Positions 43,032 to 53,005 are shown, numbered from the stretch's first letter. The stretch: 64,000 nucleotides of DNA from Salpingoeca rosetta (GCA_033442325.1 JAWQFM010000016.1:1159679-1223678), one strand, 5' to 3'. The notes: generated from the sequence alone by a model not told the origin. A program made the numbers and translations.

Positions 43032-44274
43032 ATGTGGTTGGCTGTTGTTCTCGCGGTGCTGGTGCTCGTCATCAGCCTCAGCACACACGATGTGCAAGGT
43101 GAGCAGCTGTTACAGTACCTAGAATGGTGATGGTGGTGGCCATGCGAGTGCTGTTGGCTGTGCTGCTTGAGGGAAGGGCGTGTTGCACCGCAACGATGCG
43201 CTCGCTCGCTCACTCGCTGTGTGCTTGCTGTGTGGTTACTGTGTGGTTACTGTGTGCGTGCGTGTGGCAGGTGGGCACTTGAAGGTGCTGGTGCACAACG
43301 CCCGCGTGCAAAACAGGGACAAGAACGGACGCAGCGACCCTCGTGTGCAGATGTACGTGTCGGGCATCACAGGGTTCATGTACACAAGCGTCATTCAGAA
43401 TCGCCTCAACCCGTCATGGGAGGAGCTCATCGACTTTGGTCCTCTAGCAGACATCCCGGCAACGGTATGGCCGCTCTCTGTGTCTTGTGTTTGTGTGTTT
43501 GCGTGTGTGTGTGTGTGTGTGCATGTGTGTGTGTGTGCATGTGTGTGTTTGGTAGATTCGTGGTTCATCTTGGTGCTGTGTTCGTGTCGTTGCTTATGTG
43601 CCTCACGTTGTCTTCTGCTCGTTGTTGCTCCTGCTATTGACTGACTGGCAGGGTGTCCTTGTGTCGACGTTGGAAGACAGGGACAACAAAGTGAAGTTCC
43701 AACACGTACGTTCTGTGTGTGTGTGGTGTGTGTGTGTGTTGTGTGTGTGTGTGTGTGTGTGTTCGTCGTGGGGCTGAAGCGCATGCGTGCCTGCATTCAT
43801 ATCATGTGCACATCACTCACACACACACACACACACTCACACTCACTCACACATACTCTCTCACACTCACATACATGTACACATAGCTGTTCACGTTGAG
43901 CACGCCCTTCAACTTCACGGGCCGCGGATGCTTGGAGCAAACCAGGACAGTGAAGCAGTTCAGCGGCAACACCGTTCGCTTTCTCCGCTTCACCATGTAC
44001 TACACCCCAAGTGAGTCCAGCACCGCCATCCTGACGCGTGCAGCAACACCTTGCACTTGGGGAATACACAAGCACAGCACACTCCCGCGCATCACCCACA
44101 AGCTCGCACAGTGTCTCGCAATCACACCCTCGCTCTTCCTCCAACTCACCCTCTCCCTGCTGCTGTGTGTCATGACCAGCCAACCGGTGCCAGCCACCCT
44201 TCAGCGCGTCCTGCGGCGCTGGCGCTCGATGCGTCTGTCTCGGCAACCACGAGTTTGGGTACGAGCGACGTGCG

Positions 44275-44314
<40 letters not shown>

Positions 44315-44642
44315 TGTGTGTGTGTGTGTCTGTGTCTGTGTTCATCAAACACCAAACATGCTTTCTCGTCCCAAACAACCCTTCCCCCCCCCCCCACAGC
44401 TGCGTGTGCGAGGATGAGGAGGCAAACCAACAGGACAACGTCCACTGCCAGGTGTGCAAAAAGTCATGTTCACACTCGGCATTTTGCGTGCGTGCTCGCA
44501 TCTTTCTTATGTGTGTCTTCCCTCCGCATCACACACACACACTTTCACACACACTTTCACACACACACACACTCGCTTACACACACACACACACACACTT
44601 CACACACACTTCACACACACACACACTCGCTTACACACTCGC

Positions 44643-44683
<41 letters not shown>

Positions 44684-44924
44684 AGATTATATACAAATGT
44701 TCAACTAGCAAATGAGGACGTCCAGCATCGGAAGACCATGAAGAGTGCTTTGACGTGGGTCATCGAGTAGCCGTCAGTCCGCAGGGCACTAGTTTCTCAA
44801 TCCCCGGTCTCTACCGTTTAGTGGGCTGTAGGCTAGCGGGCTCGAGATCTAAGGGCACTTCCCTACCCTTTCGATGGTGATGACAGGATCTCGCAGGACA
44901 CACACACACACACACTACACTCGC

Positions 44925-44970
<46 letters not shown>

Positions 44971-50172: not shown

Positions 50173-50258
<86 letters not shown>

Positions 50259-50445
50259 GTTCATCAACAGAACTGCTCGCCTATCAACCCGTGCGACACG
50301 AACAACGGCGGGTGTGGTTCCAACTCCCAATGCGATCACACGGGACCAGGCACGCGCAGGTGCACGTGCGACGCTGGCTACAGAAGCACCTCCAACGACG
50401 GAGCAAACTGTGTGGTGGGTTCACGGTGCAGCTGTTGAGTAGCAG

Positions 50446-50511
<66 letters not shown>

Positions 50512-51928
50512 GTGTGTGTGTACACTTGTGCTCCATCGCTCATTGTTGTTGCCTCTCGTCCCAACAACACTGCTCCTTGCATGACATGCGTTCACCCTTC
50601 GCACTTACACCCACCACCACCACCACTATCAACATTACAGGAGATTGACCCGTGTGTCACCGACAACGGAGGCTGCGGCGATGCAAGCACCACCCTGTGT
50701 GTAAAATGTGATGTGGTGCCTTGTGCTCCATCATTATTGTTGTGCTTGCAGCATGCCAGCTTCTTTTGTGGCGCTTCCACTTGCACACCACCACCTGCCG
50801 TTCCCCTCACCATCACCATCACTCCAACACACCATCTGCTCCTGTGCTCCGCCATCTCTTCGCTGCAGGTGCACCAAGACGGGCCCGAACGAGCGCGAGT
50901 GCAGCTGCAGGGACGGATTCACGTCGGAGACGGGGCGCGACTGCATCTGGATCAACCCATGCGTCAACGAGGACTACGGCGGCTGTCTGCAAGCAACAGA
51001 GATGTGAGCCTGTGTCTTGTGTGTTGTTGTGTGCGTTGTATGCGTGTGTGTAGGCATACATTGCATCTGCGCGTTCATCACCACCGATGTTGCTTGGCCT
51101 TGCACCCCACCTGACTTTCGCACGCTTCCATCCTTCACCTCCACAACAACAGCTGCATGAACACCGGCCCCAATGAGAACAAGTGCGAGTGCCGCACCGG
51201 CTTTGAGTTTGATCAAGAAACCGGACACTGCCAGGTGTGTGTGTGTGTGTCGTTGGAGTTCTTGTGACACTGGCGTATATCATGTTGTTTCCCCAAACAC
51301 ATCATGTCACTGCAATGCATCTCTCAACTGCGCGCGCTCACGCATTGGCACTCTCTCCTCCTGTCTCTTCTCCTCTCGCTCCTCATTCCATCATCAGCGC
51401 CCCAAGTGCGGTGACGGGCCGGCGTGCCCAGAGTTTGCGTCGTGTCAGGACGGCACGTGCGTGTGCAAGGGGAGCCTGCGGTTGGTCGAGACAGACACGG
51501 GTGACCTGGCCTGTGCCCCAACAACCACCACCACAACTACCACCACAACCACAACTACCACCACTACCACAACTACCACCACTACCACGACCACCACAAC
51601 CACAACTACCACCACAACCACAACCACGACAACTTCCACCACCACAACCACAACTACCACCACAACCACAACCACGACAACTTCCACCACCACAACCACG
51701 ACAACTTCCACCACCACTACCACTACCTCGACTACAAGCACATCAACAACCACATCAACAACCACGACGAGCACCGCCAAGGAGGACAAGACAACCGCAG
51801 CCCCGGACACGACAACAACAGCAACAACCACGACTCCGAACAGCCAGGAATCGACAACGAGCAAGACTGATACAACTACGCCAGGCCAAACCACCACCAA
51901 CGATGCTGTGGACACCACCACCACCACC

Positions 51929-51976
<48 letters not shown>

Positions 51977-53005
51977 GACACTGCTACTGCTACTGCCACG
52001 ACTGCCACGGCCAATGCCACTGCTGTGCCTGGCGGCAACGGGACGACGAGCGGCTCACCCGCGGTTGTGCGACCAACGGCAAGCGGGCCCGGGTCCCCGT
52101 CTGCATCGAGCAACAGCAACACGGCAAAGGCCACGATGTGGGGCGCTGTGGGCGGCTCTGCGGGGCTGATTGTCGTCATTGTCGTTGTGGTTGTCGTGGT
52201 GGTGGTGTCCCGTCGCCGTCGCAGCGGCAGCAGCAGCAGCAAGGCGTCGTGGGATGCGCCACGCGTGTCGCACGTCAACCCAATCTTCTCCGCGCCGCCC
52301 CCGGCCAACGGGCTGTACGACACGGTTGAGCCCGCACCAGAGGGTGGCCGTTTGATGGTCAACACCAACTACGAGGACACCAGCGCCCTGCGTGGCCCTG
52401 GTGGTATGTATGCGCTTGGTGATGCTGATGAGGAGGGCAACTACCAGACGCTGCCTGCGTTTGGCGATGAGGATGCGGACATGACCACGTCTGGCTACCA
52501 GGATGTGGCCGGTTACGACTACGGCAATGATGCCATGCATGAGGGTGGCTACGCCGATGTGGCGCCCCGCACGCCCACCCAAGCAGTCGTGCACGAGCCT
52601 GGCTACGCTGATGTTGGCGGCATTGCCGTGGTGCACGAGCACGGCTATGGCGATGTTGGTGGCCCCGCCACGCACGAGCCCGGGTACGCAGACGTGGACC
52701 CAGAGTCGACGTACGACACCCCGCGGCACACCGCACGCCCGGCTTACGACAACGTCGCGCGCTCGTCAGGCCCGCTGTACGATGTGCCGAAGCGCGATGC
52801 AGACGCCACGTACGACAGCGTCACGCTTGGCTCGCCCACGTACGACAACCCGCGCGTGATCAACCTGGCTGCCGACACCGCGACGTACGACAACCCGCGT
52901 GTTGTGCTGGACGACAACGCAGAGTACGACCTACCACGCCGCGCGCCCAAGGGCAAGGCGGGCAAGGAGAAGGGCTTTGGCTTTGACGATGACATGGACG
53001 TCTGA
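47408..53005 (+). CDS. Receptor B (paralog of A): signal peptide - extracellular C2 - ~10 EGF - Thr stalk - TM - multi-tyrosine tail
   Basis: Exons 47408-47486, 47742-47938, 48075-48137, 48244-48409, 48534-48607, 48769-48870, further EGF exons, and a last exon ~51398-53005. C2: GRLRVYAKSG...DRDIFSDADVAVRL...SPTWNQWLDFG...QMWDTDNSFFDSTDDL. EGFs of the INPCxxNNGGC...CxxTGPGxxxCxCxxGY type. [26 protein letters not shown] followed by SRRRR. Confidence 0.88.
47545..47685. repeat. Degenerate TGTGGC/TCTGTGGC minisatellite in intron 1 of receptor B
   Basis: Directly visible. Confidence 0.85.

What the first reader, a model, noticed from the sequence alone, without database searches (positions are those of the whole stretch)
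43032..53005. Tandem pair of kinase-less receptors: extracellular C2 + EGF + mucin stalk + 18-tyrosine tail (candidate lipid-sensing/engulfment receptor system)
Seen: two adjacent same-strand genes share the architecture SP-C2-EGFn-Thr stalk-TM-Tyr-rich tail and the same first five intron positions and phases, which indicates tandem duplication. They differ in EGF number (2 vs ~10), so reach differs. Known: C2 domains are usually cytosolic; extracellular ones are notable in perforin and Notch ligands and bind membrane lipids. Receptor B's EGFs (INPC..NNGGC..TGPG) resemble stabilin-type EGFs, and animal engulfment receptors signal via NPxY-GULP/CED-6 and Crk-DOCK180-ELMO. Inference: a Ca2+/lipid-sensing phagocytic or cell-contact receptor family in a bacterivorous animal relative, signalling through recruited cytoplasmic tyrosine kinases. 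The C2 exons are split by introns and absent from the long ORFs, so annotation could easily miss them.
Basis: partly seen in the sequence, partly recalled or inferred. Interest (0 to 1): 0.82.

Follow-up and report, generated by a model that had tools for sequence, protein, structure and literature searches.

The report
Tandem C2-EGF-mucin receptors, Tyr-rich tails
Two neighbouring genes of the choanoflagellate Salpingoeca rosetta really do encode kinase-less membrane proteins with an unusual outward-facing C2 domain and a tyrosine-motif tail, but a 2016 paper on the origin of the Crk adaptor already described both genes and their architecture, and what they do is still untested.

Summary
The window is Salpingoeca rosetta (GL832968.1). 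My GT-AG spliced models give 822 aa (gene A, identical to PTSG_12435) and 1101 aa (gene B, same span and length as the annotated neighbour, PTSG_12436). Both read: signal peptide, C2, EGF modules (2 vs 10), Ser/Thr stalk, one TM helix, acidic Tyr-rich tail (19 and 18 Tyr). Their first five introns share position and phase. RNA-seq joints confirm introns 1-5 of B exactly.

The N-terminal domain is a true C2:
- Pfam scores 27.7-30.7 bits.
- The AF2 model has pLDDT 88.7.
- Structural matches to many C2 domains reach Z about 15, with perforin tied among them.

The tails carry a membrane-proximal NPx[YF] motif and strongly enriched YDxP[RK] motifs.

The family is wider than the pair. It includes PTSG_12137, a further paralog on another contig, and a Microstomoeca roanoka transcript. 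Other notes of this scan flag similar C2-EGF receptors elsewhere in this genome.

It is not new. PMC5043372 (Sci Rep 2016, Fig. 6, Tables S5/S6) describes these genes as SP-C2-(EGF)-TM proteins with YxxP repeats and proposes them as Crk-SH2 partners. The public annotation already joins the C2 exons.

Lipid sensing and engulfment remain speculation. No DSL, MNNL or EMI domain was found by Pfam (gene B was scanned only in part).

The parts
43032..43098 (+). Gene A (PTSG_12435) exon 1: start codon and signal-peptide-like hydrophobic segment. It ends at a phase-1 intron exactly at the signal peptide/C2 boundary.
43271..44010 (+). Gene A C2 domain, in exons 2-4 (43271-43464, 43652-43705, 43887-44010). 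The cassette is flanked by phase-1 introns. Four of the five canonical Ca2+-ligand Asp are kept.
   Evidence: Pfam C2 27.7-30.7 bits. AF2 pLDDT 88.7. Foldseek TM 0.75-0.79. VIA Z 15.0-15.7. Alignments.
44180..45140 (+). Gene A EGF-like region: exons 5 (44180-44258) and 6 (44400-44451) and the start of exon 7. It holds 13 Cys, i.e. 2 modules plus 1 extra Cys.
45141..45839 (+). Gene A Ser/Thr-rich mucin-like stalk (233 aa, 55% S+T).
45840..45896 (+). Gene A transmembrane helix, followed by YTRRRHRR (positive-inside).
45897..46919 (+). Gene A cytoplasmic tail and stop codon. It has 19 Tyr and 9 YxxP. NPTF starts at 45999 and NPTY at 46101. YAVPR, YDYPR, YDVPR and YDLPR start at 46374, 46587, 46668 and 46779. 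The C-terminus reads GFGFE..DDLNV.
   Evidence: paper Table 1/S5
47408..47486 (+). Gene B (PTSG_12436) exon 1: start codon and signal-peptide-like segment, ending at a phase-1 intron.
   Evidence: RNA joint
47742..48409 (+). Gene B C2 domain, in exons 2-4 (47742-47938, 48075-48137, 48244-48409). All five Ca2+-ligand Asp positions are kept, the loops are rich in aromatic residues, and there is a hydrophobic insertion.
   Evidence: Homology to the A C2 (E 7e-16). Pfam C2 on exon 2 alone reaches only 14.4 bits. Alignment. RNA joints.
48534..51514 (+). Gene B EGF array: exons 5-13 and the start of exon 14. It holds 61 Cys, i.e. 10 modules plus 1 extra Cys. Exons: 48534-48606, 48769-48870, 49109-49518, 49714-49842, 50023-50084, 50271-50414, 50641-50696, 50869-51003, 51153-51234, 51398-.
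   Evidence: Pfam EGF_3 1.1e-12, cEGF and FXa_inhibition on exon 7
51515..52135 (+). Gene B Thr-rich mucin-like stalk (207 aa, 71% S+T).
52136..52207 (+). Gene B transmembrane helix, followed by SRRRR.
52208..53005 (+). Gene B cytoplasmic tail and stop codon. It has 18 Tyr. NPIF starts at 52277. There are four GY[AG]DV repeats. YDTPR, YDVPK, YDNPR (twice) and YDLPR start at 52712, 52778, 52841, 52886 and 52925. The C-terminus reads GFGFDDDMDV.
   Evidence: paper Table S5

Best explanation
PTSG_12435 and PTSG_12436 are an old tandem duplicate pair. They belong to a small family of type I membrane glycoproteins so far seen only in Salpingoeca rosetta and Microstomoeca roanoka. Each protein holds a canonical C2 beta-sandwich at its outermost tip, on a rod of EGF modules (2 or 10) and an O-glycosylatable Ser/Thr stalk. 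Inside the cell, each has a disordered acidic tail without any enzyme domain. The tail carries one or two NPx[YF] motifs 23-35 residues after the membrane, followed by repeated YDxP[RK] motifs.

The most likely mode of action is a kinase-less docking receptor. Something engages the ectodomain. The C2 tip would be Ca2+-loaded all the time in seawater, so the likeliest target is a membrane or lipid surface. Cytoplasmic tyrosine kinases (Src/Abl-type) then phosphorylate the tail. The pYDxP sites recruit the Crk-type adaptor (crka) through its SH2 domain, and the NPx[YF] site recruits a PTB or endocytic adaptor. Together these would link the receptor to Rac/Rap exchange factors and actin.

Shown here: the gene models, splicing of the 5' half of B, the C2 fold, the topology features, motif enrichment and motif conservation. 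Shown by others: pYDVP peptides from a different S. rosetta protein bind the M. brevicollis crka1 SH2 domain. Inferred: phosphorylation of these tails, Crk binding to them, any lipid binding by the C2, and the cellular role.
For: Gene models and annotation identity. RNA joints for B introns 1-5.

C2 fold:
- Pfam scores above the gathering cut-off for A and for the M. roanoka homolog.
- A family-only HMM hits myoferlin C2A at 5e-12.
- The AF2 model with the wide alignment has pLDDT 88.7 and VIA Z 15-15.7 at rmsd about 2 A over 116-120 of 131 residues.
- AF2 with only three family rows still gives a C2 sandwich (pLDDT 72.6, TM 0.6-0.7).
- The ESM Atlas model of the paralog matches C2 clusters.

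Extracellular placement:
- An N-terminal hydrophobic segment sits before the C2, followed by Cys-rich EGF modules and a Ser/Thr stalk.
- Arg clusters follow the TM helix.
- One Cys is invariant inside the C2.
- Mature ectodomain Cys counts are 1 + 6n + 1 in all four proteins, which suggests a C2-to-linker disulfide.

Tail motifs: YDxP[RK] occurs 3, 5, 1 and 2 times against 0.00-0.02 expected in shuffles. NPx[YF] is the first motif after the TM in all four proteins, including the other species.

Literature: PMC5043372 lists the same motifs, reports ITC binding of pYDVP peptides to Mb crka1 SH2, and reports a crka ortholog in S. rosetta and Src, Abl and DOCK1 orthologs in choanoflagellates and Capsaspora.
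Against: There is no evidence that these tails are phosphorylated. The one S. rosetta phosphoproteome supplement I could search does not mention them. The ITC peptides in the paper came from PTSG_05573, not from these proteins, and the SH2 domain came from another species. Gene A has lost the fifth Ca2+-ligand Asp. Pfam C2 scores for B exon 2 (14.4 bits) and PTSG_12137 (20.8 bits) are below the cut-off. NPx[YF] and Yxx-hydrophobic motifs could act purely as sorting signals. Splice joints for gene A were not listed in the read output. The B C2 could not be folded, because a spliced protein has no reference in these tools.
Confidence: 0.55

Rival explanations
1. Phagocytic or engulfment receptor. 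The C2 tip binds lipids on bacterial prey. NPxY recruits a CED-6/GULP-like PTB adaptor, and pYxxP recruits Crk-DOCK-ELMO to drive actin-based uptake at the collar.
For: The tails combine NPx[YF] with Crk-type YDxP motifs. Four of five or five of five Ca2+-ligand Asp are kept, and the C2 loops of B and PTSG_12137 are rich in aromatic residues. DOCK1 orthologs are reported in choanoflagellates. Both genes are expressed in culture RNA-seq.
Against: No defining domain of the CED-1/Draper/MEGF10 class (EMI, NIM) or of stabilins (FAS1, Link) was found by Pfam. There is no ITAM-like YxxL pair. There is no localisation, lipid-binding or uptake data. The resemblance rests on short linear motifs.
Confidence: 0.15
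2. Sorting or glycocalyx protein rather than a signalling receptor: a mucin-like surface glycoprotein. Its NPx[YF] and Tyr motifs would serve clathrin-adaptor endocytosis and recycling, and its ectodomain would serve coat or adhesion functions, without phosphotyrosine signalling.
For: The O-glycosylatable stalks are long, at 207-233 aa. The membrane-proximal [F/V]xNPx[YF] motif resembles the LDLR-type endocytic signal (established knowledge). There is no enzyme domain in the tail.
Against: The strict, repeated YD-x-P-[RK] core is conserved across paralogs and in M. roanoka. It matches the Crk/Abl SH2 consensus, not YxxPhi sorting signals. S. rosetta has a large phosphotyrosine toolkit (paper).
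Confidence: 0.15
3. Cell-cell or cell-matrix contact receptor, or a sensor of bacterial lipid cues that control S. rosetta development. The C2 would bind the membrane or vesicles of another cell.
For: The EGF rod plus a distal membrane-binding module parallels the C2-DSL-EGF ectodomain of Notch ligands. A protein-language-model search placed the paralog's C2+EGF segment nearest to Delta-like clusters, but only at cosine 0.82-0.83. The family is restricted to S. rosetta and its close relative M. roanoka.
Against: An Atlas score under 0.9 is at chance level by the tool's own calibration. No DSL or MNNL Pfam hit was found. Jagged2 and DLL1 C2 rank only 41-42 by Foldseek, below generic cytosolic C2 domains, and are absent from the top 50 of the better model. 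There are no expression data by life stage.
Confidence: 0.1

Closest known systems
PTSG_12435 / PTSG_12436 as described in Shigeno-Nakazawa et al., Sci Rep 2016;6:34349 (PMC5043372), Fig. 6, Table 1, Tables S5/S6
   Same: These are the same two genes. The paper draws them as signal peptide - C2 - (EGF repeats in 12436) - TM - cytosolic YxxP repeats (9 and 5), and proposes them as pre-metazoan transmembrane partners of the Crk ancestor's SH2 domain. Table S6 also lists F2U6S2 (PTSG_12137) and F2UKG9 as C2/EGF proteins with 4 YxxP.
   Different: The paper does not analyse the following, all of which are added here: the C2 fold, the Ca2+-ligand residues, gene structure and the tandem-duplication signature, the conserved NPx[YF] motif, the invariant C2 cysteine, the M. 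roanoka homolog, or splicing evidence.
BCAR1/p130Cas substrate domain
   Same: A run of YxxP (often YDxP) motifs that bind Crk SH2 once phosphorylated. The multiplicity of sites is comparable (9 and 5 here, 15 in p130Cas).
   Different: There is no SH3 domain, no Ser-rich domain and no FAT-like domain. The motifs sit on a transmembrane protein, not on a cytosolic scaffold. No significant sequence similarity was found (paper Table 1, 'NS').
Notch ligands (Delta/Jagged): C2(MNNL)-DSL-EGFn-TM
   Same: Type I membrane proteins with a distal lipid-binding C2 domain followed directly by an EGF array and a short signalling tail.
   Different: No DSL or MNNL Pfam match was found. The C2 is closer to cytosolic-type C2 domains (E-Syt, cPLA2, ferlin C2A) than to Jagged or DLL C2. 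These proteins have a mucin stalk and a long Tyr-motif tail, which Notch ligands lack.
Perforin C2 domain
   Same: An extracellular C2 that works in high external Ca2+. The structural match is Z 15.0-15.1 at rmsd 2.0 A over 114-117 residues.
   Different: It is statistically tied with many cytosolic C2 domains (Z 14.4-15.7). Sequence identity is 17-18%. There is no MACPF domain, so a perforin-specific relationship is not supported.
CED-1 / Draper / MEGF10 engulfment receptors
   Same: An EGF-rich ectodomain, a single TM helix, a kinase-less tail with NPxY, and a functional link to Crk-DOCK180 pathways in animals.
   Different: No EMI or NIM domain was found, there is no YxxL/ITAM-like pair, and those receptors have no C2 at the N-terminus.

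Membership tests
C2 domain (Pfam PF00168) | Sequence match above Pfam's gathering score (22 bits) | tested here: met
   A scores 27.7-30.7 bits and the M. roanoka homolog 30.8 bits. B exon 2 alone scores 14.4 bits and PTSG_12137 20.8 bits, both below the cut-off. Both are homologous to A.
C2 domain (Pfam PF00168) | Eight-stranded beta-sandwich fold | tested here: met
   The AF2 model of A residues 20-150 has pLDDT 88.7 and pTM 0.83. Foldseek gives TM 0.75-0.79 and VIA gives Z 15-15.7. A family-only MSA model reproduces the fold. The B C2 was not folded because it has no reference.
C2 domain (Pfam PF00168) | Five acidic Ca2+ ligands in loops 1 and 3 | tested here: inconclusive
   By alignment, B, PTSG_12137 and M. 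roanoka keep 5 of 5, and A keeps 4 of 5 (DD replaced by QH). Metal binding itself is not testable here.
C2 domain (Pfam PF00168) | Ca2+-dependent phospholipid binding | not testable with these tools
   Needs liposome assays.
Notch DSL ligands | MNNL-type C2 (PF07657) and DSL domain (PF01414) | tested here: not met
   Neither family has a Pfam hit in A at E up to 1, or in PTSG_12137 or the M. roanoka protein at E up to 0.01. Jagged2 and DLL1 rank 41-42 in Foldseek. B exons 5-6 could not be scanned as one piece.
CED-1/Draper/MEGF10 engulfment receptors | N-terminal EMI/NIM domain, and a tail with NPxY plus YxxL (ITAM-like) | tested here: not met
   No EMI hit was found. NPx[YF] is present, but there is no Yxx[LI]-x6-12-Yxx[LI] pair.
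Stabilin-type scavenger receptors | FAS1 and Link domains interspersed with EGF clusters | tested here: not met
   Only EGF_3, cEGF and FXa_inhibition hits were found.
BCAR1/p130Cas | N-terminal SH3, YxxP substrate domain, C-terminal FAT-like domain | tested here: not met
   YxxP repeats are present, 9 and 5. There are no SH3 or FAT Pfam hits. The paper reaches the same conclusion.
Crk-SH2 docking proteins (functional class) | pYxxP sites that are phosphorylated in vivo and bind Crk SH2 | not testable with these tools
   Motifs are present and enriched. Binding has been shown only for pYDVP peptides of PTSG_05573 with Mb crka1 SH2.

The most novel reading that the evidence does not exclude
The outward-facing C2 tip, permanently Ca2+-loaded in seawater, binds lipids of bacterial membranes or vesicles directly. 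The family would then be a lipid-sensing phosphotyrosine receptor system outside animals. It would couple prey capture, or the response to bacterial lipid cues, to Crk-DOCK actin signalling. The C2-EGF ectodomain would be an independent or ancestral parallel to that of Notch ligands.
Probability: 0.08. Interest if true: 0.8.

Novelty: already known. Interest (0 to 1): 0.38.

Why it matters
Choanoflagellates have a very large tyrosine-kinase and SH2 repertoire, but almost no known substrates or receptor-to-adaptor links. These proteins are among the few concrete candidates for a membrane anchor of the ancestral Crk adaptor. Extracellular C2 domains are rare; the known cases are perforin and the Notch ligands. 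Genome editing is available in S. rosetta, so the pair and its paralogs are directly testable. The value of this check is mainly to show three things. The finding is real. It is already in the literature and in the public annotation. The engulfment and lipid-sensing story has no evidence yet.

Tried and rejected
- Word-index protein searches with the A tail, the A C2 and the M. roanoka C2 returned only the query itself.
- Gene B never received a protein id. A spliced product has no reference, so its C2 could not be folded or scanned whole. I used exon-wise Pfam scans, in-script alignment and the paralogs as proxies.
- The exhaustive phmmer search with the A C2 gave 127 hits. Apart from A itself, only P0036 and P0111 align over the whole domain at the N-terminus, and only these three have EGF plus TM. 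The rest are multi-C2 cytosolic proteins that match the first half only. B itself was not among the hits, so sensitivity is limited and absence from other choanoflagellates is not shown.
- A search of the genome for the shared C-terminal YDLPR...GFGF...V segment of B found only itself.
- A PDB search with the wide alignment A1 was set aside as circular, because the alignment is dominated by canonical C2 rows. The family-only profile A2 was used instead.
- The supplement of the S. rosetta p38/phosphoproteome paper does not mention these genes.
- A literature search for 'extracellular C2 domain' plus 'choanoflagellate' found nothing.
- A perforin-specific relationship was rejected. Perforin C2 is tied with many cytosolic C2 domains.
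- A Notch-ligand relationship was rejected as a membership claim. The Atlas lead at 0.82-0.83 is within chance.
- Read laying was limited to 6000 letters and one call, so B introns 7-13 and the A joints were not checked by reads.
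Full report
**Identity of the DNA.** The window is contig C16:1159679-1223678 of a 55.4-Mb, 68-contig genome. The tail of gene A retrieves a single database protein at 100% identity: the 822-aa 'hypothetical protein PTSG_12435 [Salpingoeca rosetta]', which UniRef names 'C2 domain-containing protein'. 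That protein is encoded on GL832968.1 of GCA_000188695.1.

**Gene models.** Reading the sequence, I built spliced models using only GT..AG introns.
- Gene A has 7 exons (43032-43098, 43271-43464, 43652-43705, 43887-44010, 44180-44258, 44400-44451, 45021-46919) and encodes 822 aa.
- Gene B has 14 exons between 47408 and 53005 and encodes 1101 aa.
- The A model is letter-identical to P0001.
- The public annotation places an 1101-aa product on exactly the span of my B model. The Crk paper discussed below names the neighbour PTSG_12436.

**Transcript evidence.** I laid three stranded RNA-seq runs (raw reads) and one contig run on 43000-48999.
- For B, the joints are 47486/47742, 47938/48075, 48137/48244, 48409/48534 and 48606/48769. 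All are GT..AG and all are at my exon borders. Each is supported by 6-67 reads per run in the two deeper runs (fewer, or for the last joint none, in the third).
- Reads running off at about 48870 continue with the first letters of exon 7.
- The first mate lies on the minus strand, as expected for a plus-strand mRNA in a dUTP library.
- For A, no joints were among those listed. Depth is low, six joints were not shown, and the microsatellite-filled introns were skipped by the tool.
- The depth over A is nevertheless exon-shaped, and it is zero over 44600-44999 inside intron 6.
- Independent support that C2, EGF, TM and tail lie on one mRNA comes from a de novo transcriptome contig of Microstomoeca roanoka. 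It encodes the whole architecture in one ORF (P0036).

**Architecture.**
- Both proteins begin with a hydrophobic signal-like segment. It ends exactly at intron 1.
- A C2-like region follows.
- Next come Cys-rich EGF-like modules: 13 Cys in A and 61 in B, i.e. 2 and 10 six-Cys modules plus one extra Cys. B exon 7 gives Pfam EGF_3 at 1.1e-12 and cEGF at 4.2e-07, above their cut-offs, plus a weaker FXa_inhibition match just below its cut-off.
- The Ser/Thr-rich stalks are 233 aa (55% S+T) and 207 aa (71% S+T).
- One TM helix is followed by Arg clusters.
- The tails are 340 and 265 aa with 19 and 18 Tyr, 17-19% acidic residues, and no Pfam domain.

**Duplication.**
- The N-terminal 160-180 residues of A and B are homologous (28.5% identity, E 7e-16).
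- In a four-protein alignment, introns 1, 2, 4 and 5 of A and B fall in the same columns with phases 1, 0, 1, 2. Intron 3 (phase 0) is within one column in a gapped region.
- Introns 1-4 are also shared by the paralog PTSG_12137.
- The C2 cassette is bounded by two phase-1 introns.
- At about 30% identity this is an old duplication.

**Is it a C2 domain?** Yes, on several lines of evidence.
- Pfam C2 scores 27.7-30.7 bits for A and 30.8 bits for the M. roanoka protein, against a cut-off of 22. B exon 2 alone reaches only 14.4 bits and PTSG_12137 reaches 20.8 bits.
- A profile of the three family C2s alone hits myoferlin C2A at 5.3e-12. It then hits synaptotagmins, Munc13, MCTP2, cPLA2 and, weakly, perforin.
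- AF2 on A residues 20-150 with a 32-row alignment gives pLDDT 88.7 and pTM 0.83, all beta.
- Foldseek gives TM 0.75-0.79 to the best-matching C2 domains. VIA-align gives Z 15.0-15.7 at rmsd 1.6-2.9 A over 107-121 residues.
- That alignment was padded with canonical C2 segments, so I repeated AF2 with only the three family rows. It still gives a C2 sandwich (pLDDT 72.6) with the same top matches.
- The ESM Atlas's own model of PTSG_12137 residues 20-158 also matches C2 clusters.
- Perforin C2 (Z 15.0-15.1) is tied with plant E-Syt, Trichomonas C2, cPLA2, dysferlin and Munc13 C2B. There is therefore no perforin-specific signal.
- Jagged2 and DLL1 C2 appear only at ranks 41-42 of the weaker model and not in the top 50 of the better one.

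**Residues.**
- The four nearly invariant Asp of the C2 superfamily are present in all four family members.
- The fifth Ca2+ ligand (the DD before LG) is kept in B, PTSG_12137 and M. roanoka. In A it is replaced by QH. This agrees with the scan's note s1-434620.
- The loops of B and PTSG_12137 are rich in Trp, Phe and Tyr.
- One Cys inside the C2, and the Cys of the YTPT[ND]xC motif just after it, are invariant.
- After removing signal-peptide Cys, each ectodomain has 1 + 6n + 1 Cys. From this I infer a disulfide tying the C2 to the first EGF-like module. That would fit an oxidising, extracellular location.
- This disulfide is inference. I had no coordinates to measure it.

**Tails.**
- YxxP occurs 9 times in A and 5 times in B, as in the paper's Table 1.
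- The sharper motif YDxP[RK] occurs 3, 5, 1 and 2 times in A, B, PTSG_12137 and M. roanoka. Shuffled tails give 0.00-0.02. In 20,000 shuffles, none reached the observed count for A, B and M. roanoka, and P = 0.004 for PTSG_12137.
- Each tail starts with an NPx[YF] motif 23-35 residues after the TM helix, and A has a second one.
- B also has four GY[AG]DV repeats.
- A and B share a C-terminal YDLPR.APK.K...GFGF-acidic-V ending. A genome search with it found only itself.

**Family.**
- A six-frame search of the genome with the A C2 finds B and two further loci (C10 and C17).
- Both loci have a C2 exon followed by EGF arrays, a TM helix, and a tail with NPVY/YDVPRK or YDNP motifs.
- The C10 gene is PTSG_12137 (P0111, 799 aa).
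- The exhaustive phmmer search over 1.84 billion representatives gave 127 hits. Only P0001, P0036 (M. roanoka) and P0111 combine an N-terminal C2, EGF modules and a TM helix.
- B itself was missed, so the search is not sensitive enough to claim absence elsewhere.
- Other first-stage notes of this scan flag similar C2-EGF kinase-less receptors on other pieces of this genome.

**Prior knowledge.**
- A full-text search for the locus tag finds one paper, Sci Rep 2016;6:34349 (PMC5043372).
- Its Fig. [quoted passage not shown] It also notes EGF-like repeats in 12436, a TM region and several cytosolic YxxP motifs.
- Table 1 gives 9 and 5 YxxP. Table S5 lists the very motifs found here. Table S6 also lists F2U6S2 (PTSG_12137) and F2UKG9 as C2/EGF proteins with 4 YxxP.
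- The authors show by ITC that pYDVP peptides from another S. rosetta protein, PTSG_05573, bind the M. brevicollis crka1 SH2 domain. They propose such transmembrane proteins as pre-metazoan Crk anchors.
- They note a crka ortholog in S. rosetta, and Src, Abl, DOCK1 and SOS orthologs in choanoflagellates and Capsaspora.

**Interpretation.**
- The best-supported reading is a kinase-less docking receptor family. Its tail works like the p130Cas substrate domain without being a member of that family, and its ectodomain presents a C2 at the tip of an EGF/mucin stalk.
- Seawater holds about 10 mM Ca2+ (established knowledge). An intact C2 would therefore be metal-loaded constantly. It would act as a contact module rather than as a Ca2+ sensor.
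- Lipid binding, the target surface, phosphorylation and the cellular role are all inferred.
- The engulfment reading rests only on short motifs. No EMI, NIM, FAS1, Link, DSL or MNNL domain and no ITAM-like pair was found.
- A language-model search put the paralog's C2+EGF segment nearest to Delta-like clusters, but at cosine 0.82-0.83, which the tool itself rates as chance level.

**Verdict.** The feature is real and was correctly read. Its class and its likely adaptor link are already published, and the genes are correctly annotated. This check adds several things:
- proof of the C2 fold;
- the intron-phase evidence for duplication;
- the conserved NPx[YF] and YDxP[RK] motif grammar;
- the invariant C2 cysteine;
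- the M. roanoka homolog;
- read support for splicing of B.

Noticed in passing
window 43474-43553, 43709-43885, 44267-44347, 44520-44690, 44895-45010, 49540-49610, 50170-50260, 50450-50520: Nearly every intron of both genes is filled with (TG)n/(CA)n microsatellite. The read tool skipped these as repeats, which hampers laying split reads across the small exons of gene A.
   Followed up: no
window 45645 (G>A), 46766 (C>T), 46759 (G>A): RNA reads differ from the reference inside gene A's last exon. About half the reads differ at 45645, and most differ at 46766. These could be strain differences, or reads from other Thr/Asp-rich genes. 'Goes back' joints at 45618-45654 suggest repeat-length variation or mis-laid reads in the low-complexity stalk.
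   Followed up: no
window 52550-52700: B's tail holds four copies of a period of about 13 aa ending in GY[AG]DV (HEPGYADV-like). This is a second Tyr motif class, absent from A.
   Followed up: partly
window 46779-46916 and 52925-53002: A and B share a conserved C-terminal block, YDLPR.APK.K...GFGF-acidic-[LM]-[ND]-V-COOH. It may be a C-terminal docking (PDZ-type?) motif. No other copy was found in the genome.
   Followed up: partly
L005 (G000:C10:673000-682999) and L004 (G000:C17:695500-705499, minus strand): Two further C2-EGF-TM genes that are close paralogs of each other. The C10 gene is PTSG_12137. The C17 copy has runs of N (assembly gaps) and a different, intron-split tail with YDNP and YDN motifs.
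   Followed up: partly
P0109 (JGI/IMG metagenome protein, 296 aa): A signal-peptide-bearing protein with a C2 domain (Pfam 49.7 bits). It is 47% identical to the A C2 over 84 residues but has no EGF modules or TM helix. Secreted C2 proteins may therefore exist in uncultured eukaryotes.
   Followed up: no
window about 40282-42098 and from about 53846: The flanking genes are unrelated. Upstream is a class I methyltransferase-like gene (436 aa). Downstream is an RNase III/dsRBD (MRPL44-like) gene.
   Followed up: no
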